From Haliotis rufescens (taxonomy: Eukaryota), in contig NW_025964388.1 of the NCBI RefSeq assembly GCF_023055435.1, forward strand, positions 868,001-932,000: a DNA stretch of 64,000 bases, in the 5' to 3' direction. A model generated the notes under the pieces. That model saw only the letters and a program-made list of their open reading frames with translations, was not told the origin of the DNA and did no database searches. Positions within the stretch are counted from its first letter, which is position 1. Each line of letters begins with the position of its first letter. The position numbers and the translations under genes were made by a program. Below, piece after piece: positions 3,101 through 63,999 of this stretch.

Positions 3101-4729
3101 CGAGCACTTCCACGCATGCCACTGTTGAGGTCAAACAAGGTCAACACCCAGGCTATTGTTCATGGACTGAAAACTATATGATGATGGAAGAATGAGGTGA
3201 GGTGAGGTGAAATGGGGTTTAACGTCGCGTCCAAGATTATTGCACTTATATAGCGACGTGCATGTACGTGTTTGTGTTTGTGTGGCTGCTTGTACTAGTC
3301 CGGACTGATGCCTATTTATAGCGCTTGCTCACTGAGATACCATACCGCAGTTTAACATGAATACCCCACTCAGACACAGTATACTGACTCCGAGCCGACC
3401 AGTCCTTGTTTTAGCCCCTTTATGCCGAGCGCCTGACAGGGTAACAACCAGTAGCATCTTTTAACATCTTTTGGTATGACGCGGACCTTCCGCTCTCCGG
3501 GCGGACGTTCTACCACTAGACCACGGAGGCGGTTTGATGGAAGAATGGTTTGTGAGTATTGTTTTAAGACACTATTAACATAGTTCCAATAACAACAAAG
3601 CCCAAACATTGTTCCAGCCAGTTCATGGCGGGGACACCAGGTGTATGCTGTATATACTGCTACCACATGTCTATATATTGTCGGAGACAGCCACAGCCTC
3701 AAGACGCACCAGTCTAAATCTCTAAATGAGGAGTAACGGTGGGGTAGACTAGTCATTAAAGCGTTTGCCGGTGACGCCGAAGACCTGGTTCGATTCCCCA
3801 CATGGATACAATGTGTGAAGCACATTGCTGGTGTTCCGTGTCGTGATATTGCTGGAATATTGCTATCATACTTACTTACGGAAATGGCCCGTGAAGATCC
3901 GGGGTAGAATAGGTCTTCAGCAACCCATGCTTGTCGTAAAAGTCGATTATGCTTGTCGCAAGAGGCGACTAACCGGATCGGGTGGTCGGGCTTGCTGACT
4001 TGGTTGATGCATGTCATCGTGTCCCAAATGCGTGGATCGATGCTCATGTCAATTACTGGATTGTCTGGTCCAGACTCGATTATTTACAGACCACCGTCAT
4101 ACAGCTGGAATATTGCTGAGTGCGGCGTTAAACAACAAATAAACCAACTTACGGAAATGACTTTTGCACAGCAGCAGTATGCTCCCAACACATCTTAGGA
4201 CCAGCACATTTTTGGAGCATAAAATCTGAGGCGATCTTAAAATGCGGTAAAATCTTATTTTTCTCTCTGTATTTTCGGAAGCGAATTAATTTTCACTGAT
4301 GAGATGTATCGACGTGTGATCATACCATGAACCTCCTTTCCCTAAAGGGGCGGTCGGGTAGCCTAGTGGTTAAAGCGCTCGCTCGTCACGCCGGAGACCC
4401 GGGTTCGATTCCCCACAAGGGTACAATGTGTGAAGCCCATTTCTGGTGTCCCCTGCCGTGATATTGCTGGAATATTGCTAAAAGCGGCGTAAAATCATAC
4501 TCACTCACTCATCCTTCCCCAAACAGATGTGTCCGATTGCTTGAGAGACATTTCTTAGAATTTGACGGATGACAAAGTAGACAAAAAGTCACGGATGACA
4601 ACTTTTTCTTATACTGTAATATAGCGGCGTTTCGGAAAGATCCTTATACCATTGTCAAGCAAGGCTGAATAATGAACATGGTACAGAATATGTATGGTGG
4701 CTGATGGATTAACAGTAACAACTATTATA

Positions 4730-5071: not shown

Positions 5072-7168
5072 ACAACTGTTATATTACAGTATGATAAAGA
5101 AGTTATCCCTAATTTGTTTGTCCATTTTGTCATCGTCAATTTCTGAGAAATGCCTATCAAACAATTTATACACTCCTAGATATATTCAACAACTTCGTGT
5201 ATTCATTACATGATAACTACCCTCCGGCTTTCCGACAAGCGTTAACTGTCGAACGTACATACCTGAAGTAAAGATGTGTATAGTATCCAGAAGGACGACC
5301 CCGAGAGACAGATGTCACTTTGTTCAGAGCCTGTGTGTCACCTGGACATTACTATCGCTGGTAATCACCCCGTCAGCCTCCTTGTGGATGCACGGCCGCC
5401 GTCAGTACGCCACCACCCAGTGGAGGTTAAACTGACACTTTAACCCTTCGTGAATCAATGATTATAAGGTGAGGTGAGTGAAATGGGGTTTAACGTCGCG
5501 TCAAGCATTATTGCACTTAAAGAGCGACGTGCGTGCACGTGTGTGTGCGTGCGTGTGTGGCTGCTTGTACTGGTCCGGTTTAATGCCGATTTTATAGTGC
5601 TAGCTCAGGGAGATAACATGCCGCATTTTAACATGAATACCCCACTCAGACACAGTATACTGACTCCGAGCCGACCAGTCCTTGTTTAAGCCCCTCAATG
5701 CCGAGCGCGAGGCAGGGTAACAACAAGTGCCATCTTTTAACGTCCTTTGGTATGACGCGGCTGGGGATCGAACCCAAGACCTTCCGCTCTCCGGGCGAAC
5801 GCTCTACCACTAGACCACGGAGGCGGTCCATTTATTATTAAACACGTGCATACAATCAGGACCTTTTTTATTACCTGGGTAATTGTTTCTTCTTTCCCAA
5901 AACGTTAAAATAATGTATATATTACATAAAAATCAGAAGGAAAAATCCCAAAATATGTTAAAATTTAATAAAGTTAGTTAAAACGTTTGATTAATTGTTA
6001 AAATAGGACAATAGCCATCTAAGGTTGATGCACTGGGCTCATCAGAATATCATGAAAGTAATCTTAAATTGGCTCTATATTCAGTATAGTGAAGGAATGG
6101 GTGCCACCGTTAATCGGTGGGTGAGTGAGTGAGTGAGTGAGTGAGTGAGTGAGTATTTTGACGCCGCTCTTAGGTGGACGTGTTGACCTAGTGGTTCGCT
6201 CGTCACGTCGAAAGCCCGGGTTCGATTCCCAACAAGCACACAATGTGTGAAGCCATTTCGGTTGTTCTCCCGCAACAAGGCGTCGGCAACCTTGGTATTA
6301 AACTCGGGAATTCCTCTTGACGAACCAACGCTGTATCCATTGGGCTACCCCACCGCCCCAGACATTGCAAGTAGCCAATTAAAAAGTAAATAACACAGAA
6401 GCGCATGCACATTTTTTAAAAAGCAACTTTAGAAGCGGTTTGAGATGAGAAACAGGTACTGTTATTCATGAGGTCTTATTACCGAGAATACATTTGAAGA
6501 GTTCTTTTCTAGTGGGTCCAGATGTGGTTGCCTGTCGCGATTGTGTATCCCATCAAGTGTTAACTTTGTCTAGCTTAACGTGACAGGAATTATATTGATC
6601 TGCCAGACGACCATATCGGGCGCGTCCCTTTCCCGACAAAACACTGTCCTGCGTCACATCACAGAGGGTTATACAAAGTAAATATACCTTTTTACGTGGT
6701 CATTTTTAAGCCTAGATGGATCTGAAATGGATAATGCGAAGCTATTTTATTTATAAAATGTTTATTGATTTTCAGCAAAACTATAGGGTTTGGCCAGTAG
6801 GCAAAGCAACGGTACCTCGCTGTACAGAGTTGCGTCCCTTAGATGACACGATTCGCTGGTCGTGGTTCGAATTCAATTCATCCCGATTATGATATTTTCT
6901 CTGTCAGTGTTCGTGGTAAACGTCTGAATCCTGGGGGCTTCACACACAAAGCTTTAAGCGAATCTGTGCAAAACGGCTTAATCTCACTGTAGATCTATGT
7001 CGTAAACGAAACGATCGCTATAAAGCTACCACACGTTGTGACAGTGACATTCAACGGAGGTAAAGTTGTGACTAAGGATGATCCAACGTTTCCTTGTGCA
7101 CTGGGGCTCCACGTATAACATTAGCCAAATCTTAGAATATTTTGTTGCACCGCCACGCCACAAAACGA

Positions 7169-7356
7169 ATGACGTCATAAGACATATGACGTCATAGTAC
7201 ACAATCCAAGACGGGAATTGTGGGAGTTGGTTGCCGTGAAACTGGTCAGTCTTGGAGGTCATTCAAGTGGACACACGTCTATCTGTGGAGAGCTCACGGT
7301 CCCATCTTAAATTTACTGCAATTGATAAATTCCCTTCGCTCCATCAGCTGAACAAG
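7169..7356 (+). promoter_or_regulatory. Putative promoter and non-coding exon 1 of the array gene (two palindromic CREs plus an RFX X-box-like site); repeated in each unit
   Basis: ATGACGTCAT at 7169-7178 and 7186-7195 (also 11396/11413, 15326/15343, 19518/19535). GTTGCC(G/A)TGAAAC at 7230-7242. Donor AAG|GTAAGC at 7356, 11583, 15513 and 19705. A third TGACGTCA lies in intron 1 (7635-7642). Confidence 0.6.
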
Positions 7357-8247
7357 GTAAGCAGAGTCTTACTGTTAGAATGTGGGCATAATTATCACGA
7401 AAGGAATATTTTTTTTTTAATATAAAAGCCTTCGGAAATCTTAACAAAATGTTTCCTCGTGATTAATTACACTTCAATCGAAAATTAAACCTGTAAATAG
7501 TTGAACAGTAAATTATTATGCGAGAAAGAAACATGTGTCGTGCATTGGGTATTTCTTATTCAGCCCAATAACAGTTTTAAAACGACTTTCCGTGTGAGTT
7601 TGACAGAAGTAATTGTCTTAGCGTCACAATAGTATGACGTCACAGTATCACGTGTCATGAGCTGCTATCAGGCCTGCATGAACCCGATGACATTTCTATC
7701 ACCCATTAGTTTTATGGATACCTTTATTTGTGTTTTGTGTGAATGATTAATAATGGATTTTAAAACTTGTTTGGTATCTTATAAGCCAAGCAGGACATCC
7801 TTTTTCATAAAATATTCCCCCTATTCTCCCAATCGCCAGTCCAGGGCTCAGTTAATGTAAATTAATTAAATAATGGTGCCACACATTCTATTTATTATTG
7901 TAAGATATCACAAAATGTAGGATTGATGTCGGGATATCGATTATAAGGTATCATTAACAAATTATTAATATCACTTAATAGAATGAGTGATGAAGAAAAA
8001 AACATTTCGATACATTTATCAATATTTTTTTTATCGATATCTAAAAATCGAATTTGTGATATCAATAATCAATTTATTATATCATAAAATCGAATATGTG
8101 AAATCCATAAATACATTATTTATATAGTTGAAACAGAGAATAAACAGTAAACCGTTTCCTGGTACATTAATGCATATCATATGACATTATTATAAACATG
8201 TCCGGCCCGTGCATGTCATCAATGTGTATATTCTCCTTAATTACAGC

Positions 8248-9415
8248 ATGGCGGACATATTGACAATGATTGACATCGTCTACCCAAAGCTCCGTATGTT
8301 CACGGACGGAGCAAGAACAGCCGCACTCATCATGTACAGATTGAAATATGGCAAGAAACAGCCACAACACGACTATATGGTGGATCCAGAGGAAGATAAC
8401 TCTCACTGGGGTCCAGGGGGAGATGACTCTTGGCAAACTTGGGGACCAGGGGAAGATAACCTTCACTGGGGACAATGGGAAGACATTTTGGAAGACGAGA
8501 GGGACACAAGGTTCGATAACTCGTACACCTCCAAGCCACAGTCGAACTGGTATTCTAACTTGGATGCGGAATCTGAGACAAACGTGAAGATTCCAGATGA
8601 CGCAATCATTCCCATCGGATATGAAGGTGAGCTCTCTTAATGACTTGTTTCATATATGACTGGTAAACAATATAAATAAACAGTACCTTGTTAAAATATA
8701 TACATAATTAATTTGGCACGACGTTTTAAAGTAATGATGGCAGGAAAGTAATTTGATGCGCCAACGTTGTGAAGCAGATCCTGATTTTGAACACCTCTGT
8801 TGAGTATTTAATATATTTTTGTTTAAACATTTTGTTCGCTGACGTAAAACGCTTACACCCACCCACCTACCCGTGTTTTAGTATGTGACAGGAAACAAAT
8901 GCACACTTCTTCCTGGCTTATGTTTCCGTGGAACCAGCATCAGTGATCTAACATAGAATCACCGAGGTTCATTTGTTCACATGTTGTTCCAGTAATGGCG
9001 GGTGATGTGAGAACCGCCAGGAGAAAATCAGGGAAGAAATCTCTTCGATCACGAATCGTATCGGTAAGTCATACTTACTCTGAGCGTACACCATTAACGA
9101 ATATATGGTACAGGAGAGCGCGAATAACGTCACTCCCATGTTGTAGTTACTTTCTAAGTACTGCTCCTGTTGCTTGAGAATCAGAATTGTCGGTTTAGGA
9201 TTTCGTGGAGTTGCTTTAGGCTATGGTTGTGTTAACTTTTCAATGCAGCATTAAGGTTATAAAGCATTGGAACAATAACGAACAAGTATGTCGTCAGTGT
9301 GTGTAACATGCCCGTGTCACTCTCTGTGAACATTGTATAATATGTGTGTCATACTTTATATTTCCAGGTGATGCGGCGGCTGTCATTCTGTATACCAAGA
9401 AAAACAACTCTATAA
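8248..9415 (+). CDS. Unrecognised 165-aa protein, array copy 1 (acidic WG-repeat middle, basic C-terminus)
   Basis: Coding exons 8248-8626 (ttacag|cATG ... GAA G|gtgagc), 8993-9063 (ttccag|TA ATG ... TCG|gtaagt) and 9368-9415 (tttccag|GTG ... CTA TAA). Phases match. AATAAA at 9670-9675. Protein: MADILTMIDIVYPKLRMFTDGARTAALIMYRLKYGKKQPQHDYMVDPEEDNSHWGPGGDDSWQTWGPGEDNLHWGQWEDILEDERDTRFDNSYTSKPQSNWYSNLDAESETNVKIPDDAIIPIGYEVMAGDVRTARRKSGKKSLRSRIVSVMRRLSFCIPRKTTL. Confidence 0.75.
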
Positions 9416-12400
9416 ATAATCTCACAAAGCTCCGTTGGATAAATCCTAATATATTTGTGAACAGAAACAGTATTACCTTATATTTGATTGAGTAACGAGA
9501 ATTGTATTTTGTGTATGGTCATAAAAATAGTTGTCTCTGTTAATGTAGAAGGTCCATCTCACCTAAACAAGTGTATATAAACTGCCTGTTGAAGATAATA
9601 ATGTTCTATTCAATTGTTACTGACAATCAATCAACAATGTACATATTTCTATTTATTTGTATTATTGTAAATAAACAAAACAAAATTCTTTTGAGCCATA
9701 CAGTCTTCTGGATTTATTTTTTCTAGTTGTTTCATCTAATTGAATCTCGAGTATCTAGAGCATTATACATCAAGTTTAATATGATCCATTCGCTGACATC
9801 GGAACCGATCCAAATAGTACGACGCTAGCCATGGAATCAAATTACTGTCACGAGCTGTAGAGATGGATAAAGATGTGAAATCGTAGCCATGTACTGCTCC
9901 ACTTTTACCCTCTGTGCCAACACATAGCTACGGTTCACGTATTCTTACTTGCTTACCAGCTTCGTCAAGGTTGGTGCAGACAAACCAAGGGTAATAATCG
10001 GGGCGAAGGGCGCAACTCTGTCGTTTTACAGAAAGACAGTAAAAGCTGATCATAAAAGTCGGACAGTAACAGCTGAGCATAAAAGTCGGACAGTAACAGC
10101 TGAGCATTAAAGTCGGATAGTAATAGCTGAGAATTAAAGTCGGACAGTAAAAGCTGAGAATTAAAGTCGTATAGTAGAGGCTGAGCATTGAAGTCGGATA
10201 GTAAAAGCTGAAAATTTAAGTCGTATAGTTAAAGCTGAGCATTAAAGTCGGATAGTAAAAGCTGAGCATTAAAGTCGGATAGTAAAAGCTGAGCATTGAA
10301 GTCGGACAGTAACAGCTGAGCATTACAGTCGGACAGTAACAACTGAAAATTGAATAGCTACAATTTTGCAGCTGAGATGGATAAAGCAAGAGACAGAAGT
10401 GATGAAGCTACCAAATCAAATCTATGTGTCCAGGGTATTTCCCAACAAGCACACAATATGTGAAGCCATTTCGGTTGTTCTCCCGCAACAAGGCGTCGGC
10501 AACCTTGGTATTAAACTCGGGAATTCTTCTTGACGAACCAACGCTGTATCCATTGGGCTACCCCACCGCCCCAGACATTGGAAGTAGCCAATTAAAAAGT
10601 AAATAACACAGAAGCGCATGCACATTTTTTAAAAAGCAACTTTAGAAGCGGTTTGAGATGAGAAACACGTACTGTTTTTCATGAGGTCTTATTACCGAGA
10701 ATACATTCGAAGAGTTCTTTTCTAGTAGGTCCAGATGTGGTTGCCTGTCGCGATTGTGTATCCCATCAAGTGTTAACTTTGTCTAGCTTAACGTGACAGG
10801 AATTATATTGATCTGCCAGACGACCATATCGGGCGCGTCCCTTTCCCGACAAAATACTGTCCTGCGTCACATCACAGAGTGTTATACTAATTAAACATAC
10901 CTTTTTACGTGATCATTTTTAAGCCTATATGGCTCTGAAATGGATAATGCGAAGCTATTTTATTTATAAAATGTTTATTGATTTTCAGCAAAATGATAGG
11001 GTTTGGCCAGTAGGCAAAGCAACGGTACCTCGCTGTACAGAGTTGCGTCCCTTAGATGACACGATTCGCTGGTCGTGGTTCGAATTCAATTCATCCCGAT
11101 TATGATATTTTCTCTATCAGTGTTCGTGGGTTCACCAAAGTGGTAAACGTCTGAATCCTGGGGGCTTCACACACAAAGCTTTAAGCGAATCTGTGCAAAA
11201 CAGCTTAAACTCACTGTAGATCTATGTCGTAAACGAAACGATCGCTATAAAGCTACCACACGTAGTAACAGTGACATTCCACGGAGGTCAAGCTGTGACC
11301 AAGGATGATCCGACGTTTCCTTGTGCACTGGAGCTCCACGTATAACATTAGCCAAATCTTAGAATATTTTGTTGCACCGCCACGCCACAAAACGAATGAC
11401 GTCATAAGACATATGACGTCATAGTACACAATCCAAGACGGGAATTGTGGGAGTTGGTTGCCATGAAACTGGTCAGTCTTGGAGGTCATTCAAGTGGACA
11501 CACGTCGATCTGTGGAGAGCTCACGGTCCCATCTTAAATTTACTGCAATTGATAAATTCCCTTCGCTCCATCAGCTGAACAAGGTAAGCAGCGTCTTACT
11601 GTTAGAATGTGGACATAATTATCACGAAAGCAATATATTTTTTTAAATATAAAAGCCTTTGGAAATCTTAACAAAATGTTTCCTCGTGATTAATTACACT
11701 TCAATCGAAAATTACAGCTGTAAATAGTAAACAGTAAATTGATATGCAAGAAAGAAACATGTGTCGTGCATTGTGTATGTCTTATTCAGCCCAATAACAG
11801 TTTTACAGGACTTTCCGTGTGAGTTTGTTGACAGAAGTAATTGTCTTAGCGTCACAATAGTATGACGTCACAGTATCACTCGTCATGAGCTGCTATCAGG
11901 CCTGCATGAACCCGATGACATTTCTATCACCCATTAGTTTTATGGATACCTTTATTTGTGTTTTGTGTGAATGATTAATAATGGATTTTAAAACTTGTTT
12001 GGCATTTTATAAGCCAGGCAGGACATACTTTTTCATAAAATATTCCCCCTACTCTCCTAATCGCCAGTCAAGGGCTCAGTTAATGTAAATTAATTGATTA
12101 ATGGTGCCACACATTCTATTTATTATTGTAAGATATCACAAAATGAAGAATTGATGTCGCGATATCGATTATAAGATATTGTAAATGAATTATTAATATA
12201 ACTAAATAGAATGAGGGATGATGATAAAACTTATTTCGATACATTTATCAATATCTTAAATTCTTTTATTGATATCTAAAAATCGAATTTGTGATATCAA
12301 TAATCAATTTATTATATCAAAAAATCGAATGTGTAAAATCAATAGATACATCATTAATATAGTTGAAACAGAGTAAAACAGTAAACCGTTTCCTGGTACA

Positions 12401-12481
12401 TAAGTACATATCATATGACATTATTATAAACATGTCCGTCCCTTGCATGTCATCAATATGTATATTCTCCTTGATTACAGC

Positions 12482-13652
12482 ATGGCGGACATATTGACAA
12501 TGATTGACATCATCTACCCCAAGCTCCGTATGTTCACGGACGGAGCAAGAACAGCCGCCCTCATCATGTACAGATTGAAATATGGCAAGAAACAGCCACA
12601 ACACGACTATAGGGTAGATCCAGAGGAAGATAACTCTCATTGGGGTCCAGGGGGAGATGACTCTTGGCAAACTTGGGGATCAGGGGAAGATAACTTTCAC
12701 TGGGGACAATGGGAAGACATTTTGGAAGACGAGAGGGACACAAGGTTCGATAACTCGTACACCTCCAAGCCACAGACGAACTGGTATTCTAACTTGGATG
12801 CGGAATCTGAGACAAACGTGAAGATTCCAGATGACGCAATCATTCCCATCGGATATGAAGGTGAGCTCTCTTAATGTCTTGTTTCATATATGACTGGTAA
12901 ACAATATAAATAAACAGTACCATGTTAAAATATATACATAATGAATTTTGCACGACGTTTTACAGTAATGATGGCAGGAAAGTAATTTGATGCGCCAACG
13001 TTGTGAAGCAGATCCTGATTTTGAACAGCTCTGTTGAGTATTTAATATATTTTATGTTTAAACATTTTGTTCGCTGACGTAAAACGCTTACACCCACCCA
13101 CCTACCCGTGTTTTAGTATGTGACAGGAAATAAATGCACAATTCTTCCTGGCTTATGCTTCCATGGAACCAGCATCAGTGATCTAACATAGAATCACCGA
13201 GGTTAATTTGTTCACATGTTGTTCCAGTAATGGCGGGTGATGTGAGAACCGCCAGGAGAAAATCAGGGAAGAAATCTCTTCGGTCACGAATCGTATCGGT
13301 AAGTCCACAAACTTACTCTGAGCGTACACCATTAACGAATATATGGTACAGGAGAGCGCGAATAACGTCACTCCCATGTTGTAGTTACTTATTAAGTACT
13401 GCTGCTGTTGCTTGAGAATCAGAATTGTCGGTTTAGGATTTCGTGGAGTTGCTTTAGCCATGGTTGTGTTAACTTTTCAATGCAGCATTAAGGTTATAAA
13501 GCATTGGAACAATAACGAACAAGCATGTCGTCAGTGTGTGTAACATGCCCCTGTCACTCTCTGTGAACATTGTACAATATGTGTGTCATACTTTATATTT
13601 CCAGGTTATGCGGCGGCTGTCATTCTGTATACCAAGAAAAACAACTCTATAA
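12482..13652 (+). CDS. Unrecognised 165-aa protein, array copy 2
   Basis: Exons 12482-12860, 13228-13298 and 13605-13652; all splice sites intact. The exon 3/4 differences from copy 1 (CGA>CGG, GTG>GTT) are synonymous in this frame. Confidence 0.75.
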
Positions 13653-16399
13653 ATAATCTCACAAAGCTCCGTTGGATAAATCATCATATTATATTTGTGA
13701 ACAGAAACAGTATTACCCTTATATTTGATTGTGTAACGAGAATTGTATTTTGTGTATGGTCATAAAAATAGTTGTCTCTGTTAATGTAGAAGTTCCATCT
13801 CACTTAAACAAGTGTATATAAACTGCCTGTCAAAGATAATAATGTTCTATTCAATTGTTACTGACAATCAATCAACAATGTACATATTTCCAATTATTTT
13901 ATTATTGTAAATAAACAATTTTTTTCTGTTGAGCCATGCAGTGTTCTGCATTTATTTTTTCTAGTTGTTTCATGTCTAATTGAATCTCGAGTATCTAGGG
14001 TTTTATACATCAATTTTGATATACTTCATTCGCTGACATCGGAACCGATCCGAATAGTACGACGCTAGCCATGGAATCAAATTACTGTCACGAGCTGTAG
14101 AGATGGATCAAACTGTAAAATCGTAGACACGTACTGCTCACTTTTACCCTCTGTGCCAATACATAGCTACGGTTCACGTCTTCTAACTTGCTACCAGCTC
14201 CGTCAGGGTTGGTGCAGACAAACCAAGGGTAATAATCGGGGCGAAGGGCGCAAGTCTGTCGTTTTACAGAACGACAATAAAAGCTGATCATAAATGTTGG
14301 ACAGTAACAGCTGAGCATTGAAGTCGGACAGTAACAGCTGAGCATTACAGTCGGACAGTAACAACTGAAAATTGAATAGCTACAATTTCGCAGCTGAGAT
14401 GGATAAAGCAAGAGACAAAGTGATGAAGCTACCAAATCAAATCTATGTGTCCAGGGTATTTCCCAACAAGCACACAATATGTGAAGCCAATTTCGGTTGT
14501 TCTCCCGCAACAAGGCGTCGGCAACCTTGGTATTAAACTCGGGAATTCCTCTTGACGAACCAACGCTGTATCCATTGGGCTACCCCACCGCCCCAGACAT
14601 TGCAAGTAGCCAATTAAAAAGTAAATAACACAGAAGCGCATGCACATTTTTTAAAAAGCAACTTTAGAAACGGTTTGAGATGAGAAACACGTACTGTTTT
14701 TCATGAGGTCTTATTACCGAGAATACATTCGAAGAGTTCTTTTCTTATAAGTCCAGATGTGGTTGCCTGTCGCGATTGTGTATCCCATCAAGTGTTAACT
14801 TTGTCTAGCTTAACGTGACAGGAATTATTTTGATCTGCCAGACGACCATATCGGGCGCGTCCCTTTTCCGACAAAATACTGTCCTGCGTCACATCACAGA
14901 GGGTTATACAAATTAAACATACCTTTTTACGTGGTCATTTTTAAGCCTATATGGATCTCAAATCGATAATGCGAGGGTATTTTATTTATAAAATGTTTAT
15001 TGATTTTCAGCAAAATGATAGGGTTTGGCCAGAAGGCAAAGCCGGCGTACCTCGCTGTACAGAGTTGTGTCCCTTAGATGACACGATTCGCTGGTCGTGG
15101 TTCGAATTCGATTCACCCCGACTATGATATTTTCTCTGTCAGTGTTCGTGGGTTCACCAAAGTGGTAAACGTCTGAATCCTGGGGGCTTCACACACAAAG
15201 CTTTAAGCGAATCTGTGCAAAACGGCTTAACCTCACTGTAGCTCTATGTCGTAAACGAAACGATCGCTATAATCTTAGATAGCCAAATCTTAGAATATTT
15301 TGATGCGCCGCCATGTCACAAACAAATGACGTCATAAGACATATGACGTCATAGTACACAATCCAAGACGGGAATTGTGGGAGTTGGTTGCCGTGAAACT
15401 GGTCAATCTTGGAGGTCATTCAAGTGGACACACGTCGATCTGTGGAGAGCTCACGGTCCCGTCTTAAATTTACTGCAATTGATAAATTCCCTTCGCTCCA
15501 TCAGCTGAACAAGGTAAGCAGTGTCTTACTGTTAGAATGTGGACATAATTATCACGAAAGCAATATATTATTTTAAATATAAAAGCAAACTGTTTCCTCG
15601 TGATTAATTACACTTCAATCGAAAGTTACAGCTGTCAATAGTTGAACAGTAAATTGATATGCAAGAAAGAAACATGTGTCGTGCATTGGGTATTTCTTAT
15701 TCAGCCCAATAACAGTTTTAAAACGACTTTCCGTGTGAGTTTGTTGACAGAAGTAATTGTCTTAGGGTCACAATAGTATGACGTCACAGTATCACGTCAC
15801 ATGAGCTGCTATCAGGCCTGCATGAACCCGATGACATTTCTATCACCCATTAGTTTTATGGATACCTTTATTTGTGTTTTGTGTGAATGATTAATAATGA
15901 ATTTTAAAACTTGTTTGGTATCTTATAAGCCAAGCAGGACATCCTTTTTCATAAAATATTCCCCCTATTCTCCCAATCGCCAGTCCAGGGCTCAGTTAAT
16001 GTAAATTAATTAATTAATGGTGCCACAAATTCTATTTATTATTGTAAGATATATTGTAGAATTGATGTCGCGATATCGATTATAAGATATCATTAACAAA
16101 TTATTAATATCACTTAATAGTATGAGTGATGAAGAAAAAAACATTTCGATACATTTATAAATATCTTCATTTTTTTTTATCGACATCTAAAAATCGAATT
16201 TGTGATATCGATAATCAATTTATTATATCATAAAATCGAATATGTGAAATCCATAAATACATTATTAATATAGTTGAAACAGAGAATAACCAGTAAACCG
16301 TTTCCTGGTACATTAGTGCATATCATATGACATTATTATAAACATGTCCGGCCCTTGCATGTCATCAATAATTTTATGTATATTCTCCTTGATTACAGC

Positions 16400-17564
16400 A
16401 TGGCGGACATATTGACAATGATTGACATCATCTACCCCAAGCTCCGTATGTTCACGGACGGAGCAAGAACAGCCGCACTCATCATGTACAGATTGAAATA
16501 TGGCAAGAAACAGCCACAACACGACTATATGGTGGATCCAGAGGAAGATAACTCTCATTGGGGTCCAGGGGGAGATGACTCTTGGCAAACTTGGGGACCA
16601 GGGGAAGATAACTTTCACTGGGGACAATGGGAAGACATTTTGGAAGACGAGAGGGACACAAGGTTCGATAACTCGTACACCTCCAAGCCACAGACGAACT
16701 GGTATTCTAACTTGGATGCGGAATCTGAGACAAACGTGAAGATTCCAGATGACGCAATCATTCCCATCGGATATGAAGGTGAGCTCTCTTAATGTCTTGT
16801 TTCATATATGACTGGTAAACAATATAAATAAACAGTACCATGTTAAAATATATACATAATTAATTTTGCACGACGTTTTAAAGTAATGATGGCAGGAAAG
16901 TAATTTGATGCGCCAACGTTGTGAAGCAGATCCTGATTTTGAACAGCTCTGTTGAGTATTTAATATATTTTTTGTTTAAACATTTTGTTCGCGTAAAACG
17001 CTTACACCCACCCACCTACCCGTTTTTTAGTATGTGACAGGAAACAAATGCACAATTCTTCCTGGCTTATGTTGCCATGGAACCAGCATCAGTGATCTAA
17101 CATAGAATCACCGAGGTTCATTTGTTCACATGTTGTTCCAGTAATGGCGGGTGATGTGAGAACCGCCAGGAGAAAATCAGGGAAGAAATCTCTTCGATCA
17201 CGAATCGTATCGGTAAGTCTTACTTACTCTGAGCGTACACCATTAACGAATAGATGGTACAGGAGAGCGCGAATAACGTCACTCCCATGTTGTAGTTACT
17301 TTCTAAGTACTGCTGCTGTTGCTTGAGAATCAGAATTGTCGGTTTAGGATTTCGTGGAGTTGCTTTAGGCTATGGTTGTGTTAACTTTTCAATGCAGCAT
17401 TAAGGTTATAAAGCATTGGAACAATAACGAACAAGCATGTCGTCAGTGTGTGTAACATGCCCGTGTCACTCTCTGTGAACATTGTATAATATGTGTGTCA
17501 TACTTTATATTTCCAGGTGATGCGGCGGCTGTCATTCTGTATACCAAGAAAAACAACTCTATAA
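16400..17564 (+). CDS. Unrecognised 165-aa protein, array copy 3
   Basis: Exons 16400-16778, 17142-17212 and 17517-17564; splice sites and stop intact. Confidence 0.75.
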
Positions 17565-20500
17565 ATAATCTCACAAAGCTCCGTTGGATAAATCCTAATA
17601 TATTTGTGAACAGAAACAGTATTACCTTATATTTGATTGTGTAACGAGAATTGTATTTTGTGTATGGTCATAAAAATAGTTGTCTCTGTTAATGTAGAAG
17701 TTCCATCTCACCTAAACAAGTGTATATAAACTGCCTGTTGAAGATAATAATGTTCTATTCAATTGTTACTGACAATCAATCAACAATGTACATATTTCTA
17801 TTTATTTGTATTATTGTAAATAAACAAAACAAAATTCTGTTGAGCCATACAGTCTTCTGGATTTATTTTTTCTAGTTGTTTCATCTAATTGAATCTCGAG
17901 TATCTAGAGTATTTTACATCAAGTTTAATATGATCCATTCGCTGACATCGGAACCGATCCAAATAGTACGACGCTAGCCATGGAATCAAATTACTGTCAC
18001 GAGCTGTAGAGATGGATAAAGATGTGAAATCGTAGCCATGAACTGCTCCACTTTTAGCCTCTGTGCCAACACATAGCTACGGTTCACGTATTCTTACTTG
18101 CTACCAGCTTCGTCAAGGTTGGTGCAGACAAACCAAGGGTAATAATCGGGGCGAAGGGCGCAACTCTGTCGTTTTACAGAAAGACAGTAAAAGCTGATCA
18201 TAAAAGTCGGACAGTAACAGCTGAGCATAAAAGTCGGACAGTAACAGCTGAGCATTAAAGTCGGATAGTAATAGCTGAGAATTAAAGTCGGACAGTAAAA
18301 GCTGAGAATTAAAGTCGTATAGTAGAGGCTGAGCATTAAAGTCGGATAGTAAAAGCTGAGCATTGAAGTCGGACAGTAACAGCTGAGCATTACAGTCGGA
18401 CAGTAACAGCTGAGCATTGAAGTCGGACAGTAACAGCTGAGCATTACAGTCGGACAGTAACAACTGAAAATTGAATAGCTACAATTTTGCAGCTGAGATG
18501 GATAAAGCAAGAGACAGAAGTGATGAAGCTACCAAATCAAATCTATGTGTCCAGGGTATTTCCCAACAAGCACACAATATGTGAAGCCAATTTCGGTTGT
18601 TCTCCCGCAACAAGGCGTCGGCAACCTTGGTATTAAACTCGGGAATTCTTCTTGACGAACCAACGCTGTATCCATTGGGCTACCCCACCGCCCCAGACAT
18701 TGGAAGTAGCCAATTAAAAAGTAAATAACACAGAAGCTCATGCACATTTTTTAAAAAGCAACTTTAGAAACGGTTTGAGATGAATAACACGTACTGGTTT
18801 TCATGAGGTCCTATTACCGAGAATAAATTCGGAGAGTTCTTTTCTAGTAGGTCCAGATGTGGTTGCCCGTCGCGACCGTGCATCCCATCAAGTGTTAACT
18901 TTGTCTAGCTTAACGTGACAGGAATTATATTGATCTGCCAGACGACCATATCGGGCGCGTCCCCTTCCCGACAAAACACTGTCCTGCGTCACATCACAGA
19001 GGGTTATACAAATCAAACATACCTCTTTACGTGGTCATTTTTAAGCCTATATGGCTCCGAAATCGATAATGCGAAGCTATTTTATTTATAAAATGTTTAT
19101 TGATTTTCAGCAAAATGATAGGGTTTGGCCAGTAGGCAAAGCAACGGTACCTCGCTGTACAGAGTTGCGTCCCTTAGATGACACGATTCGCTGGTCGTGG
19201 TTCGAATTCAATTCATCCCGATTATGATATTTTCTCTGTCAGTGTTCGTGGGTTCACCAAAGTGGTAAACGTCTGAATCCTGGGGGCTTCACACACAAAG
19301 CTTTAAGCGAATCTGTGCAAAACGGCTTAAACTCAATGTAGACCTATGTCGTAAGCGAAACGATCGCTATAAAGCTACCACTCGTAGTAACAGTGACATT
19401 CCACGGAGGTAAAGCTGTGACTAAGGATGATCCAACGTTTCCTGATGCACTGGGGCTCCACGTATAACATTAGCCAAATCTTAGAATATTTTGTTGCACC
19501 GCCACGCCACAAACCGAATGACGTCATAAGACATATGACGTCATAGTACACAATCCAAGACGGGAATTGTGGGAGTTGGTTGCCATGAAACTGGTCAGTC
19601 TTGGAGGTCATTCAAGTGGACACACGTCGATCTGTGGAGTGCTCACGGTCCCATCTTAAATTTACTGCAGTTGATAAATCCCCTTCGCTCCATCAGCTGA
19701 ACAAGGTAAGCGGTGTCTTACTGTTAGAATGTGGACATAATTATCACGAAAGTAATATATTTTATTAATTATAAAAGCCTTCGGAAATCTTAACAAAATG
19801 TTTCCTCGTGATTAATTACACTTCAATCGAAAATTACAGCTGTAAATAGTTGAAGAGTCAATTATTATGCGAGAAAGAAACATGTGTCGTGCATTGGGTA
19901 TTTCTTATTCAGCCCAATAACAGTTTTAAAACGACTTTCCGTGTGAGTTTGACAGAAGTAATTGTCTTAGCGTCACAATAGTATGACGTCACAGTATCAC
20001 GTGTCATGAGCTGCTATCAGGCCTTCATGAACCCGATGACTTTTCTATCACCCATTAGTTTTATGGATACCTTTATTTGTGTTTTGTGTGAATGATTAAT
20101 AATGAATTTTAAAACTTGTTTGGTATCTTATAAGCCAAGCAGGACATCCGTTTTCATAGAATATTCCCCCTACTCTCCCAATCGCCAGTAAAGGGCTCAG
20201 TTAATGTAACTTAATTAATTAATGGTGCCACACATTCTATTTATTATTGTAAGATATCACAAAATGAATAATTGATGTCGGGATATCGATTATAAGATAT
20301 CATTAACAAATTATTAATATCACTTAATAGAATGAGTGATGAAGAAAAAAACATTTCGATATATTTATAAATATCTTAAATTTTTTTTATCGATATCTAA
20401 AAGTCGAATTTGTGATATCGATAATCAATTTATTATATCATAAAATCCAATATGTGAAATCCATAAATACATTATTAATATAGTTGAAACAGAGAATAAC

Positions 20501-20609
20501 CAGTAAACCGTGTCCTGGTACATTAGTGCATATCATATGACATTATTATAAACATGTCCGGCCCTTGCATGTCATCAATAATTTTATGTATATTCTCCTT
20601 GATTACAGC

Positions 20610-21779
20610 ATGGCGGACATATTGACAATGATTGACATCATCTACCCAAAGCTCCGTATGTTCACGGACGGAGCAAGAACAGCCGCACTCATCATGTACA
20701 GATTGAAATATGGCAAGAAACAGCCACAACACGACTATATGGTGGATCCAGAGGAAGATAACTCTCATTGGGGTCCAGGGGGAGATGACTCTTGGCAAAC
20801 TTGGGGACCAGGGGAAGATAACCTTCACTGGGGACAATGGGAAGACATTTTGGAAGACGAGAGGGACACAAGGTTCGATAACTCGTACACCTCCAAGCCA
20901 CAGACGAACTGGTATTCTAACTTGGATGCGGAATCTGAGACAAACGTGAAGATTCCAGATGACGCAATCATTCCCATCGGATATGAAGGTGAGCTCTCTT
21001 AATGTCTTGTTTCATATATGACTGGTAAACAATATAAATAAACAATACCATGTTAAAATATATACATAATGAATTTTGCACGACGTTTTACAGTAATGAT
21101 GGCAGGAAAGTAATTTGATGCGCCAACGTTGTGAAGCAGATCCTGATTTTGAACACCTCTGTTGAGTATTTAATATATTTTTGTTTAAACATTTTGTTCG
21201 CTGACGTAAAACGCCTACACCCACCCACCTACCCGTGTTTTAGTATGTGACAGGAAACAAATGCACACTTCTTCCTGGCTTATGTTTCCGTGGAACCAGC
21301 ATCAGTGATCTAACATAGAATCACCGAGGTTCATTTGTTCACATGTTGTTCCAGTAATGGCGGGTGATGTGAGAACCGCCAGGAGAAAATCAGGGAAGAA
21401 ATCTCTTCGGTCACGAATCGTATCGGTAAGTCCACAAACTTACTCTGAGCGTACACCATTAACGAATATATGGTACAGGAGAGCGCGAATAACGTCACTC
21501 CCATGTTGTAGTTACTTATTAAGTACTGCTGCTGTTGCTTGAGAATCAGAATTGTCGGTTTAGGATTTCGAGGAGTTGCTTTAGCCATGGTTGTGTTAAC
21601 TTTTCAATGCAGCATTAAGGTTATAAAGCATTGGAACAATAACGAACAAGTATGTCGTCAGTCTGTGTAACATGCCCGTGTCACTCTCTGTGAACATTGT
21701 ATAATATGTGTGTCATACTTTATATTTCCAGGTGATGCGGCGGCTGTCATTCTGTATACCAAGAAAAACAACTCTTTAA
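20610..21779 (+). CDS. Unrecognised 165-aa protein, array copy 4
   Basis: Exons 20610-20988, 21355-21425 and 21732-21779. The last codon CTA>CTT is synonymous and TAA is preserved. Confidence 0.75.
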
Positions 21780-22381
21780 ATAATCTCACAAAGCTCCGTT
21801 GGATAAATCCTAATATTATATTTGTGAACAGAAACAGTATTACCTTATATTTGATTGTGTAACGAGAATTGTATTTTTTGTATGGTCATAAAAATAGTTG
21901 TCTCTGTTAATGTAGAAGTTCCATCCCAACTGCCTGTTGAAGATAATAATGTTCTATTCAATTGTTACTGACAATCAATCAACAATGTACATATTTCTAT
22001 ATATTTGTATTATTGTAAATAAACAAAAAAAAATCTTTTGGGCCATACAGTGTTCAGGATTTTTTTTTCTAGTTATGTCATGTCTAATTGAATCTCGAGT
22101 ATCTAGGGTATTATACATCAATTTTAATATGATCCATTCGCTAACATCGGAACCGATCCAAATAGTACGACGCTAGCCATGGAATCAAATTACTGTCACG
22201 AGCTGTAAAGATGGATCAAACTGTAAAATCGTAGACACGTACTGCTCCACTTTTACCCTCTGTGCCAATACATGGCTACAGTTCGCGTCTTCCAACTTGC
22301 TACCAGCTCCGTCAGGGTTGGTGCAGACAAACCAAGGGTAATAATCGGGGCGAAGGGCGCTACTCTGTCGTTTTACAGAAC

Positions 22382-23235
22382 GACAGTAAAAGCTGAGCAT
22401 AGAAGTCGGACAGCAACAGCTGAGAATTGAAGTCGGATAGTAAAAGCTGAGCATTGGAGTCGGAAGTAAAAGCTGAACATTGAAGTCGGATAGTAAAAGC
22501 TGAGCATTGAAGTCGGATAGTAAAAGCTGAGCATTGACGTCGGACAGTAAAAGCTGAGCATTGAATTAGGACAGTAACAGCTGAGCATTGAAGTCGGACA
22601 GTAAAAGCTGAGCATTGAAGTCGGTCAGTAAAAGCTGAGCATTGAAGTCGGATAGTAAAAGCTGAGCATTGAAGTCGGATAGTAAAAGCTGAGCATAGAA
22701 GTCGGACAGTAACAGCTGAGCATTGACGTCGGACAGTAACAGCTGAGCATTGAAGTAGGACAGTAACAGCTGAGCACTGAAGTAGGACAGTAAAAGCTGA
22801 GCATTGAAGTAGGACAGTAACAGCTGAGCATTGAAGTAGGACAGTAACAACTGAGCATTGACGTCGGACAGTAAAAGCTGAGCATTGACGTCAGATAATA
22901 AAAGCTGAGCATAAAAGTCGGACGGTAACAGCTGAGCATTGTGGTAGGACAGTAACAGCTGAGCATTGTGGTAGGATAGTAAAAGCTGAGCATTGAAGTC
23001 GGACAGTAACAGCTGAGCATATAAGTCGGATAGTAAAAGCTGAGCATTGTGGTAGGACAGTAAAAGCTGAACATTGTGGTAGGACAGTAAAAGCTGAGCA
23101 TTGTGGTAGGACAGTAACAGCTGAGCATATAAGTCGGATAGTAAAAGCTGAGCATTGAAGTAGGACAGTAACAGCTGAACATTGAAGTAAGACAGTAAAA
23201 GCTGAGCATTGACGTCGGCCAGTAACAGCTGAAAA
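22382..23235. repeat. 27-bp minisatellite (VNTR) AGCTGAGCATTGAAGTCGGACAGTAA(C/A) at the 3' end of each array unit
   Basis: About 32 copies here, ~11-12 at 10036-10349, ~4 at 14273-14370 and ~11 at 18184-18470. It explains the MLSCYCPTS and LLLSDFNAQ 9-aa-repeat ORFs. Confidence 0.95.
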
Positions 23236-24139
23236 TTAAATAGCTACAACTTCGCAGCTGAGATGGATATAGCAAGAGATAGAAGTGATGAAGCTACCAA
23301 AACAAATCTATGGGTCCAGGGTATTTATCATAATAGAATGAAGATATATAATACTAGATAATCGATAATGCATCTGATTGGTTATGAGATAACTACCCCT
23401 TGAAAATCCGGCTTAGAATTGGTCTTCAGCTGCCCATGCTTGTTGTAACAGGCAAGATCGGCTCGCTGACTTGGTTTATGCATGGCATCGCATACGTTTG
23501 CGTAGATCGATGTTCATGATGCCCATCACTGGATTTTCTGGTCCAGAATATTTACAGACATACGGCTGCAATATTGCTGAGCGCGGTGTTAAACAGCAAA
23601 CAAACAAAATAAGATAACACACACGTGACAACTACAAACTCTACCCGTCGGGGTATGATGACACACATTCAACCGCGTCACCGAGCTTGACCATCCGATT
23701 CATTTAACGCCTTTTACAACACGAAACCGACCATTTGACATTCTGAGAGTTGGGTGGGGTTGGAGATCGTGTACCGATACCAGATATTTTTTCAGCTTCA
23801 AAGCCAGATATGTTTTTAATTGAAACTATGAAAAACTACATATTGTTTCTTTTAAATCACCTTGCAATAATGTAATATTTGAGGCTGACAATTATTTTTT
23901 CAACAGTCTAATTTATAATTATTTTTTCCGAGCATTTTCTGGGACAATATTTTGTCCAGTGACTATGTATTTTCTCTGTTGATGAAAATGGACAGAATTG
24001 GCTACTGTGCATCAAGTATATCCAACTGAAGGGGATAACATCAACAGTCATGCATGCGGACATGGCGTCAACTGTAGGGGGTGGTGCTCCTTCCTTCCAC
24101 TGTTAAGAGGCGAAGAGAGCGCCCGAAATATGATGCTAG

Positions 24140-28442: not shown

Positions 28443-28873
28443 TGTAGCAGGGCGTGGAGTCATCCCACAGATGACATCCTTACCTTGTCAGCTTGCTGAT
28501 GGGGTTAACATCTTTGGTCATGTGGACAAGGTGTCCGACCTCTGATCAGAAGGTCCGTGGTTTCGAAATCCAATCACGGGACTCTGAAATTTTATGGCCG
28601 CTACATTGGCGCCAAACGTGGGGCTGAGCACGTTCATATTAAATTTGAGCAAAATAAGCATTAGTACCCTACTATGCAGCCCGGGACGTGCCTTCTGTTG
28701 ACGGGGGAGTATGTAGCAGGGCGTGGAGTCATCACTCAGATGACATCCTTACCTTGTCAGCTTGCTGATGGGTCTAACCTCTTTGGTAATGTTGACAAGG
28801 TGTCCGATCTCTGATCAGAATGTCTGTGGTTTCGAATCCCATCACGGGACTCGGAGATTTTATGGCCGCTACA
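28443..28873 (+). mobile_element. TRIM (miniature LTR retrotransposon) with tRNA-like sequence in its LTRs
   Basis: Direct repeats 28443-28605 and 28712-28873, both TGTAGC...GCTACA. PBS TGGCGCCAAACGTGGGGC at 28607-28624, one mismatch to the tRNA-Lys1,2 PBS. Polypurine tract GACGGGGGAGTA before LTR2. Flanks CCTAA and CCTAC. Confidence 0.88.
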
Positions 28874-29021
28874 CCTACAGTGACTGTGTTTACTGAGCTT
28901 TGGTTGATGGCATCACTTCCCTTCCACTTCATTTTTGTACATGTGTATGTGTGACCCTGTGGGGATTCTCTGGTAGCAGATAATTGTCTCCCCATGGGTA
29001 TGTGGCAAGGATAGGTTCTAT

Positions 29022-29850
29022 GTACCCCATGATTGTCTCCCTGTGGGGATTCCAGGCCAGAATAAAGTTCTCCAGTACCCCATGGTGGCCTCCTTGTGGG
29101 GATTCCAGGCCAGAATACAGTTCTCCAGTACCCCATGATTGTCTCCCTGTGGGGATTCCATGCCAGAATACAGTTCTCCAGTACCCCATGTTTGTCTCCC
29201 TGTGGGGATTCCAGGCCAGAATACTGTTCTCCAGTACCCCATGTTTGTCTCCCTGTGGGGATTCCAGGCCAGAATGCTGTTCTCCAGTATCCCATGTTTG
29301 TCTCCCTGTGGGGATTCCAGGCCAGAATACAGTTCTCCAGTATCCCATGTTTGTCTCCCTGTGGGGATTCCAGGCCAGAATGCTGTTCTCCAGTACCCCA
29401 CGTTTGTCTCCCTGTGGGGATTCCAGGCCAGAATACTGTTCTCCAGTACCCCATGATTGTCTCCCTGTGGGGATTCCAGGCCACAGTTCTCCAGTACCCC
29501 ATGTTTGTCTCCCTGTGGGGATTCCAGGCCAGAATACAGTTCTCCAGTACCCCATGTTTGTCTCCCTGTGGGGATTCCAGGCCAGAATACTGTTCTCCAG
29601 TACCCCATGTTTGTCTCCCTGTGGGGATTCCAGGCCAGAATGCTGTTCTCCAGTATCCCATGTTTGTCTCCCTGTGGGGATTCCAGGCCAGAATACAGTT
29701 CTCCAGTACCCCATGTTTGTCTCCCTGTGGGGATTCCAGGCCAGAATACTGTTCTCCAGTACCCCATGATTGTCTCCCTGTGGGGATTCCAGGCCACAGT
29801 TCTCCAGTATCCCATGTTTGTCTCCCTGTTAGGATTCGAGGCCAGAATAG
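29022..29850. repeat. 53-bp minisatellite (~15-16 copies) in the putative first caspase intron
   Basis: Unit CCCCATGTTTGTCTCCCTGTGGGGATTCCAGGCCAGAATACAGTTCTCCAGTA, with some 47-bp variants. It is the source of the long repetitive ORFs in all frames. Confidence 0.95.

Positions 29851-50988: not shown

Positions 50989-63999
<13,011 letters not shown>

What the first reader, a model, noticed from the sequence alone, without database searches (positions are those of the whole stretch)
6226..23326. Four-copy tandem array of an intact, unrecognised 4-exon gene that the ORF track shows only in fragments
Seen: each unit has a non-coding exon, then three coding exons with canonical, phase-compatible splice sites and a downstream AATAAA, giving a 165-aa protein. 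All four copies are intact, while introns and spacers carry many indels. The three variant sites in the last two exons (CGA/CGG, GTG/GTT, CTA/CTT) are all synonymous in the predicted frame; exon 2 has a mix of synonymous and replacement changes. I recognise no domain. Inference: a recently amplified, lineage-specific gene family under coding constraint. This is the best candidate for an undescribed system in the window.
Basis: partly seen in the sequence, partly recalled or inferred. Interest (0 to 1): 0.85.

Follow-up and report, generated by a model that had tools for sequence, protein, structure and literature searches.

The report
Abalone-only four-copy orphan gene array
Four tandem copies of a small, spliced, expressed gene found only in abalones (Haliotis) are real and intact, but public RefSeq annotation already lists all four as "uncharacterized protein" and their function is still unknown.

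Summary
Window 6226-23326 is exactly four ~4.1-kb tandem units. Each carries a non-coding exon and three coding exons with GT..AG introns, giving a 165-aa protein that is intact in all copies. Exon-only contigs from four public runs (three organism labels, four studies) show all three predicted junctions, so the gene is transcribed and spliced as predicted.

The gene is not unrecognised. The window is Haliotis rufescens (red abalone). RefSeq already models the four copies as 165-aa uncharacterized proteins (LOC125377698, LOC124137754, LOC124137753, LOC124137752).

Relatives exist only in Haliotis: H. cracherodii (96% identical) and H. rubra (137 aa, 54%). Pfam, PDB sequences, 1.84 billion protein representatives and the ESM Atlas gave nothing else.

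- **Constraint:** paralogues show purifying selection (dN/dS 0.09-0.40; no indels in exons).
- **Conservation pattern:** between species only the first ~40 residues and the basic C-terminal ~25 are conserved. The Trp-rich acidic linker, with its WG and LIR-like motifs, is not.
- **Structure:** AlphaFold2 predicts mostly disorder.
- **Promoter:** each copy keeps three perfect CRE palindromes.
- **Origin:** one founding duplication, with its left breakpoint inside a SINE.

Verdict: a real, genus-restricted orphan gene family. It is ordinary in kind and its function is unknown.

The parts
6226..23326 (+). Whole tandem array: four units of ~4.0-4.2 kb, the last lengthened by its minisatellite
   Evidence: Self-BLAST; boundary mapping
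6187..6273 (.). tRNA-like SINE fragment (contains GGTTCGATTCCC) that holds the left breakpoint of the array at 6226; related copies are dispersed through the window
   Evidence: the 5' part of the element is present only before unit 1; internal junctions start at its TTCCCAACAAGC part
7150..7256 (+). Copy 1 proximal promoter, with two perfect CRE palindromes TGACGTCA at 7170-7177 and 7187-7194. Equivalents: 11397/11414, 15327/15344, 19519/19536
   Evidence: 17 CREs in the window against 0.9 expected; 12 lie in the array; the 66-nt core is identical in all four copies
7257..7356 (+). Copy 1 exon 1, non-coding, no ATG. The 5' end is approximate (the furthest contig start). Equivalents: 11484-11583, 15414-15513, 19606-19705
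7635..7642 (+). Third CRE, in intron 1, next to a CACGTG E-box. Equivalents: 11863, 15779, 19984
8247..8626 (+). Copy 1 exon 2: ATG at 8248 and 126 codons plus 1 nt (LOC125377698, protein P0005)
8993..9063 (+). Copy 1 exon 3
9368..9690 (+). Copy 1 exon 4: CDS to the stop at 9413-9415, 3' UTR, AATAAA at 9670. The 3' end is approximate
10035..10346 (.). 27-bp minisatellite at the 3' end of unit 1 (11.6 copies). Equivalents: ~14278-14376 (short), 18183-18467 (10.6 copies), 22382-23232 (31.6 copies)
12481..12860 (+). Copy 2 exon 2 (LOC124137754, P0003). Exon 3 is 13228-13298; exon 4 CDS is 13605-13652; AATAAA at 13910
16399..16778 (+). Copy 3 exon 2 (LOC124137753, P0001). Exon 3 is 17142-17212; exon 4 CDS is 17517-17564; AATAAA at 17819
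20609..20988 (+). Copy 4 exon 2 (LOC124137752, P0002). Exon 3 is 21355-21425; exon 4 CDS is 21732-21779; AATAAA at 22018

Best explanation
This is a real, transcribed, four-exon protein-coding gene restricted to abalones (genus Haliotis). In red abalone it is present as four tandem paralogues, and RefSeq already annotates them as uncharacterized proteins.

Origin of the array (inferred from the sequence). One founding tandem duplication copied a 4.1-kb segment. Its left breakpoint lies inside a tRNA-like SINE and its right breakpoint lies in unique DNA just past a 27-bp minisatellite. All three internal junctions are identical, so the growth from two to four copies came from unequal crossing-over between units.

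The protein (165 aa) is predicted to be mostly disordered, and I saw no obvious signal peptide or membrane span by eye. Its conserved parts are a basic amphipathic N-terminal helix (about residues 1-40) and a strongly basic C-terminal amphipathic segment (about residues 140-163) that carries an invariant RRLS basophilic-kinase site. The Trp-rich linker between them evolves fast and its length varies.

Most likely mode of action (inference, roughly 30% likely). It is a small intracellular adaptor or regulator that binds its partner or partners through the two terminal helices. It would be switched on transcriptionally by CREB/ATF-type bZIP factors acting on three conserved CRE palindromes per copy, and possibly tuned by phosphorylation of the tail. 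Gene amplification would serve dosage.
For: - **Array:**
- **Gene model:** intact exons and splice sites in all four copies. The four RefSeq 165-aa models match the exon-by-exon translation of copies 1-4.
- **Transcription and splicing:** exon-only contigs with GT..AG joints at all three junctions, in runs X1 and X4 (organism A), X6 (organism B) and X7 (organism C).
- **First AUG:** exon 1 has no ATG. After splicing the start context has A at -3 and G at +4.
- **Constraint among paralogues:** 12/499 variable CDS sites against 119/1531 in introns (p=5e-6), and no exon indels. dN/dS is 0.09-0.40, with 5 replacement to 7 synonymous sites (binomial p=0.005).
- **Restricted range:** only H. rufescens, H. 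cracherodii and H. rubra appear among 5.8 billion and 1.84 billion proteins. There are only four copies in this genome.
- **Conserved ends, variable middle:**
- **Disorder with terminal helices:** AlphaFold2 mean pLDDT 37.7; helices at 2-34, 126-135 and 144-156. The highest hydrophobic moments are at residues 15-32 and 146-163.
- **CREs:** 12 of the window's 17 TGACGTCA sites lie in the array, against 0.9 expected for the whole window. The 66-nt promoter core is identical in all copies.
Against: - The functional part is inference only. There is no homologue of known function, no confident fold and no tissue or condition metadata, because the runs are coded.
- CRE palindromes are consensus matches, not shown binding sites.
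- Introns 2 and 3 are also less diverged (4.0-4.4% variable sites) than intron 1 (10.5%). Part of the exon similarity could therefore come from gene conversion rather than selection.
- The RNA status of the contig runs is the tool's guess. It rests on contigs covering exons only and skipping introns.
- Copy number in other individuals was not tested.
- The absence of a signal peptide or membrane span was judged by eye, not with a predictor.
Confidence: 0.85

Rival explanations
1. The transcript is real but effectively non-coding, or codes for a peptide of no function. The 165-codon frame would survive only because the copies are young.
For: The copies are only 2.7-4.4% diverged. Variant counts are small, with 12 coding sites. 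The linker changes between species at about the neutral replacement-to-synonymous ratio, 8:2 and 10:3 codons. No domain or confident fold was found.
Against: The frame is kept in H. rubra at only 54% identity, with three in-frame gaps and near-identical N- and C-terminal blocks. dN/dS among paralogues is 0.09-0.40 (p=0.005). Exons have no indels while introns and spacers have many. The start is the first AUG and sits in a strong context.
Confidence: 0.07
2. The unit is a transposon, or a satellite-like repeat carrying a chance ORF.
For: The unit starts inside a SINE fragment and ends with a minisatellite. Short pieces of intron 1 (window ~8015-8155) and of the 5' spacer (~6292-6380 and ~6817-6897) recur across the genome.
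Against: Exon 2 occurs only four times in the 1.33-Gb genome, all in this array. The genome-wide DNA matches are 50-120-bp pieces of intron and spacer only. Pfam found no transposase, RT or integrase in the encoded protein, and the other unit ORFs of 60 aa or more were listed but not scanned. The unit has a spliced host-type gene structure.
Confidence: 0.02
3. The four-copy array is an assembly artefact, made by haplotypes or mis-joined reads, and the true locus has one or two copies.
For: Tandem repeats with minisatellites are hard to assemble. No long-read or depth check could be run here, because the one read-laying run went to RNA.
Against: The four copies are all different from each other: 2.7-4.4% substitutions plus many indels, and different minisatellite lengths. 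That is more distinct sequences than two haplotypes can supply. Independent RNA contigs of organism A carry different variant combinations (X4 has C at 8286, X1 has A), and these match variants that distinguish the assembled copies.
Confidence: 0.05
4. The protein works through the short linear motifs of its acidic linker. These are the WG repeats (Argonaute-hook-like) and a WEDI LIR-like Atg8-binding motif, as another first-stage note (s1-811289) proposed.
For: H. rufescens has three WG motifs, at residues 54, 65 and 74, and an acid-flanked WEDI at residue 77.
Against: The H. rubra homologue has no WG or GW motif and no WEDI. Its linker has net charge -2 against -18 in H. rufescens, and is 28 residues shorter. 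Species B and C already replace residues in this stretch.
Confidence: 0.08

Closest known systems
RefSeq models of Haliotis rufescens: XP_048247621.1 (LOC125377698), XP_046360147.2 (LOC124137754), XP_046360146.2 (LOC124137753) and XP_046360145.2 (LOC124137752)
   Same: They match the exon-by-exon translations of copies 1, 2, 3 and 4 at every residue compared, and are 165 aa long.
   Different: Nothing differs. These are the same genes. RefSeq gives no function, and no paper in the held library mentions these LOC identifiers.
Haliotis cracherodii XP_071109497.1 and Haliotis rubra XP_046562946.1 (LOC124271839), both uncharacterized proteins
   Same: They are orthologues or homologues with the same N-terminal ~40 residues and the same C-terminal KKSL...RIVSV.RRLSFCIPRKT block.
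   Different: H. rubra is 137 aa and 54% identical. It lacks the WG motifs and the strongly acidic character of the linker.
Taxonomically restricted (orphan) genes amplified in tandem, common in mollusc genomes (general knowledge)
   Same: A short, disordered protein with no homologues outside a narrow clade, in young tandem copies.
   Different: Here expression, splicing, constraint on the termini and the duplication breakpoints are all documented for this particular family.
Abalone fertilisation proteins lysin and sp18 (Pfam Egg_lysin), the classic fast-evolving Haliotis-specific small proteins
   Same: Small, Haliotis-restricted and fast-evolving in part.
   Different: There is no sequence match to any Pfam family at E up to 10. 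I saw no N-terminal signal peptide by eye. The protein is predicted disordered rather than a helical bundle.

Membership tests
Annotated RefSeq gene (Haliotis rufescens LOC125377698 / LOC124137752-4) | The protein sequence matches the translation of the window's exons | tested here: met
   each of the four RefSeq proteins matches one copy at every copy-diagnostic residue (11, 44, 67, 72, 99)
Transposable element | Encodes transposase, RT or integrase, or occurs as dispersed full-length copies | tested here: not met
   Pfam found no family in the encoded protein or its homologues. Exon 2 occurs only four times in the genome, all in the array. Only 50-120-bp intron and spacer pieces are dispersed
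GW/WG Argonaute-hook proteins (GW182/TNRC6-like) | Multiple GW/WG motifs kept among orthologues | tested here: not met
   Three WG motifs in H. rufescens and none in H. rubra
Atg8-interacting (LIR) proteins | A conserved [W/F/Y]xx[L/I/V] core with acidic flank | tested here: not met
   WEDI at residue 77 is deleted in H. rubra. Binding itself cannot be tested with these tools
Egg_lysin / sp18 abalone acrosomal proteins | A match to the Pfam Egg_lysin profile; a signal peptide | tested here: not met
   Pfam gave 0 families at E up to 10 for P0001, P0004, P0006 and the exon 2 peptides. The N-terminus carries two Asp residues within its first 9 residues and has no obvious hydrophobic signal core; this was judged by eye, without a predictor
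CREB/ATF target genes | Functional full-palindrome CRE (TGACGTCA) within about 100 bp of the transcription start | tested here: inconclusive
   Two perfect CREs lie 63-87 bp upstream of the furthest contig start, and one more lies in intron 1. All are kept in all four copies. Factor binding and inducibility cannot be tested here

The most novel reading that the evidence does not exclude
A genus-specific, cAMP/CREB-inducible disordered protein. Its two conserved basic amphipathic helices would dock on a conserved cellular target (membrane, kinase or phosphatase, or nucleic acid). Its fast-evolving Trp-rich linker would be under diversifying selection. That would make it a young regulatory module invented in abalones and then amplified for dosage in the Californian lineage.
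Probability: 0.15. Interest if true: 0.45.

Novelty: new member of a known kind. Interest (0 to 1): 0.3.

Why it matters
The finding gives a well-documented case of a taxon-restricted gene. The exact duplication breakpoints, independent splice evidence in several species, and a clear split between conserved termini and a free-running linker are all in hand. That makes it a tractable example for studying how orphan genes arise and amplify in molluscs, and red abalone is a species of aquaculture and conservation interest.

It does not open a long-standing question. The gene models are already public. The value added here is characterisation, and the correction of the 'unrecognised' claim.

Tried and rejected
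- **Pfam:** scans of the exon 2 peptides and of the full RefSeq proteins at E up to 10 gave 0 families.
- **PDB:** a sequence profile search with alignment A2 at E up to 10 gave 0 hits.
- **phmmer:** a search of P0001 against 1.84 billion representatives found only the H. rubra protein.
- **Profile search:** A2 against 5.8 billion proteins found only the two Haliotis clusters.
- **ESM Atlas:** P0001 gave no usable hit. For P0006 the best feature score was 0.78 and all TM-scores were below 0.5, which is noise level.
- **AlphaFold2:** with the 5-sequence alignment, mean pLDDT was 37.7 and pTM 0.18. That is too poor for a fold search, so none was run.
- **Papers:** a search for the five LOC identifiers found 0 papers.
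- **The look-up of encoding contigs:** Synteny, copy number and DNA-level dN/dS in H. cracherodii and H. rubra could not be done.
- **Earlier findings:** a search by words gave nothing.
- **A first fuzzy-regex script** timed out and was replaced by BLAST.
- **Joined translation:** Exon 2 was searched by reference. The peptides of exon 3 (23 aa) and exon 4 (15 aa) were not searched on their own. Full-length searches used the database proteins returned by the tools. dN/dS was summed exon by exon with the split codon left out.
- **Minisatellite as recombination point:** rejected. The unit junction lies about 90 bp beyond the minisatellite.
Full report
**Observation**

A self-comparison of the window shows four head-to-tail units: 6226-10438, 10439-14459, 14460-18559 and 18560-23326. 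They are 94-95% identical by BLAST. Pairwise substitution distance over ungapped columns is 2.7-4.4%. Tandem Repeats Finder places a 27-bp minisatellite near the 3' end of units 1, 3 and 4, with 11.6, 10.6 and 31.6 copies, and BLAST shows a short tract at the same place in unit 2. The longest run explains why the last unit is longer. The window contains no N.

- Copy 1: exon 2 is 8247-8626, exon 3 is 8993-9063, and exon 4 CDS is 9368-9415.
- Copy 2: 12481-12860, 13228-13298 and 13605-13652.
- Copy 3: 16399-16778, 17142-17212 and 17517-17564.
- Copy 4: 20609-20988, 21355-21425 and 21732-21779.

All introns are GT..AG with pyrimidine-rich acceptors. The phases fit, and every copy reads 126 + 1 (split GTA codon) + 23 + 15 codons, which is 165 aa followed by a stop. 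One AATAAA follows each stop by 239-258 nt.

**Is it a gene?**

The 126-aa exon 2 peptide, searched by reference, hit a 165-aa RefSeq protein of Haliotis rufescens at 98% identity. The 90% cluster holds four H. rufescens proteins: LOC125377698, LOC124137754, LOC124137753 and LOC124137752. It also holds one from H. cracherodii. Alignment shows that the four match copies 1, 2, 3 and 4 at every diagnostic residue. The window is therefore red abalone, contig C610 at 868-932 kb.

Independent evidence comes from the reads tool. Four public runs were laid on 6500-10400. They carry three organism labels and come from four studies, and are held as Logan contigs. The contigs cover the exons only. They show GT..AG joints that skip 890, 366 and 304 bases, exactly at 7356/8247, 8626/8993 and 9063/9368. 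One 651-nt contig in X1 spans all four exons.

The tool labels these runs 'RNA?' as a guess. The exon-only, intron-skipping layout is what identifies them as transcripts. Contigs start as far upstream as 7257 and end at 9676, just past the AATAAA at 9670. That implies an mRNA of roughly 0.86 kb. Exon 1 has no ATG. After splicing, the start codon sits in an A(-3)/G(+4) context.

Contigs from organism A differ at sites that distinguish the assembled paralogues: position 8286 is A in X1 and C in X4. At least two distinct versions are therefore expressed.

**Constraint**

In a MAFFT alignment of the four units, 12 of 499 CDS columns vary, against 119 of 1531 intron columns (Fisher p=5e-6). Exons have no indel columns, introns have 50 and the 5' spacer has 87.

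Nei-Gojobori counts were summed exon by exon, with the split codon omitted. They give pN/pS of 0.09-0.40 for the six pairs. Five replacement sites among 12 variable sites is fewer than neutral expectation (binomial p=0.005).

One caveat applies. Introns 2 and 3 (4.0-4.4% variable) are also less diverged than intron 1 (10.5%). Gene conversion may therefore add to the similarity of the 3' half.

**Range of the family**

- phmmer of P0001 against 1.84 billion 50% representatives found one protein. It is H. rubra LOC124271839, 137 aa and 54% identical.
- A profile of all six proteins found nothing further among 5.8 billion proteins.
- Pfam, PDB sequences and the ESM Atlas gave nothing.
- In the 1.33-Gb genome, exon 2 and the H. 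rubra protein match only the four array copies.
- The sequencing-run index lists exon 2 words in 14 RNA-like runs of five organism labels and seven studies, at shares consistent with close relatives.

The family looks genus-restricted and is expressed in several species.

**Not a transposon**

A whole-genome DNA search with one unit returned only 50-120-bp dispersed pieces. These come from intron 1 (window ~8015-8155) and from the 5' spacer (~6292-6380 and ~6817-6897). Exons are unique to the array. Pfam found no family in the encoded protein. The unit's other ORFs of 60 aa or more were listed but were not scanned.

**How the array arose**

The three internal junctions are identical, reading ...GTCCAGGGTAT|TTCCCAACAAGC.... 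The left edge of the array (6226) lies inside a tRNA-like SINE at 6187-6273. This element contains GGTTCGATTCCC and has related copies elsewhere in the window. The right edge (23326) lies in unique sequence about 90 bp past the minisatellite. At most a few bases of microhomology (ATT) are shared.

I infer one founding non-homologous (microhomology-type) tandem duplication of 4.1 kb. Unequal crossing-over between units then brought the number to four. Copies 1 and 3 are the closest pair (2.7%), and the others differ by 3.8-4.4%. The minisatellite is not the junction.

**The protein**

AlphaFold2, run with the shallow family alignment, gives mean pLDDT 37.7 and pTM 0.18. It predicts helices only at 2-34, 126-135 and 144-156. 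This fits a mostly disordered protein, and the model is too poor for a fold search.

Net charge by region is +4 (residues 1-40), -18 (41-126) and +11 (127-165). The highest helical hydrophobic moments are at 15-32 and 146-163.

Compared with H. rubra, residues 1-40 and the C-terminal block KKSL..RIVSV.RRLSFCIPRKT are nearly unchanged. The linker loses 28 residues, all three WG motifs, the WEDI motif and most of its negative charge, falling to net -2.

In the contigs of organisms B and C, every replacement in exon 2 falls at residues 41-112, apart from a V11I difference, which among the four copies is peculiar to copy 1. Changed codons split 8:2 and 10:3, replacement to synonymous, which is about the neutral ratio.

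The conserved and presumably functional parts are therefore the two terminal basic amphipathic segments. They include an invariant RRLS (a basophilic-kinase, PKA-type consensus, from general knowledge). The linker motifs proposed in another first-stage note (s1-811289) are not conserved.

**Regulation**

TGACGTCA, the full palindromic cAMP-response element (general knowledge), occurs 17 times in the window against 0.9 expected. Twelve of these lie in the array, three per copy. Two lie 63-87 bp upstream of the furthest contig start, and one lies in intron 1 beside a CACGTG. A 66-nt promoter core containing both CREs is identical in all four copies, while about 7% of columns vary in the neighbouring spacer. 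This is a consensus match, not proof of binding.

**Best explanation and its limits**

Shown:
- a real, spliced, expressed, Haliotis-restricted gene in four tandem paralogues;
- purifying selection among the paralogues;
- conserved termini and a free-running linker;
- the gene models are already in RefSeq.

Inferred:
- the duplication mechanism;
- an intracellular location, because I saw no obvious signal peptide or membrane span by eye;
- CREB/ATF-driven transcription and phospho-regulation of the tail;
- action as a small adaptor through the terminal helices.

I put the functional inference at about 30%. Rivals (non-coding transcript, transposon, assembly artefact, linker-motif scaffold) are each under 10%, for the reasons given in their entries.

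**Procedural notes**

Exon 2 was searched by reference, and the full-length queries were the database proteins the tools returned.
- Reads were laid on the RNA question, so copy number in DNA reads was not tested.

**Verdict**

This is an ordinary kind of thing, a taxon-restricted gene amplified in tandem. It is documented in more detail than usual, is already annotated as 'uncharacterized', and has no known function. Interest is modest.

Noticed in passing
window 856-1638 (-): A 260-aa ORF matches Pfam 7tm_1, the rhodopsin-family GPCR (E=4e-24). It is probably a single-exon receptor gene just upstream of the array. Two further TGACGTCA sites lie inside it, at 1035 and 1344.
   Followed up: partly
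window 55785-56219 (-): An ORF fragment matches Enolase_C (E=3e-14, profile positions 82-135). It is an exon of an enolase gene, or an enolase-derived fragment.
   Followed up: partly
window 6187-6273, with related copies at 4379-4449, 38294-38373, 51912-51991, 60860-60930 and elsewhere: A dispersed tRNA-like SINE head (GGTTCGATTCCC) recurs at 75-85% identity many times in the window. One copy carries the left breakpoint of the array.
   Followed up: partly
window 8015-8155 (intron 1 of copy 1): An AT-rich ~100-bp element, partly self-complementary, recurs on many contigs of the genome and often in local clusters (for example C112:58794762-58795327 and C594:8447451-8447743). It could be a MITE or a satellite-like repeat.
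   Followed up: no
window 29022-29849: A 53-bp tandem repeat of 15.8 copies at 92% identity. It produces long spurious ORFs on both strands (28774-29956).
   Followed up: no
window 39958-40377: An 83/167-bp tandem repeat of 5 copies. It overlaps the place where another first-stage note (s1-811136) describes amplified splice acceptors in a caspase gene.
   Followed up: no
window 59794-60138 and 63166-63853: A 14-bp minisatellite (24.6 copies) and a 21-bp minisatellite (32.9 copies). The second is strongly G-rich (GC skew +0.31 in 62-64 kb).
   Followed up: no
window 34490-35008, 44840-45335 (reverse strand) and 55485-56029: Three copies of a ~500-bp dispersed repeat, 76-85% identical. One lies beside the enolase fragment.
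   Followed up: no
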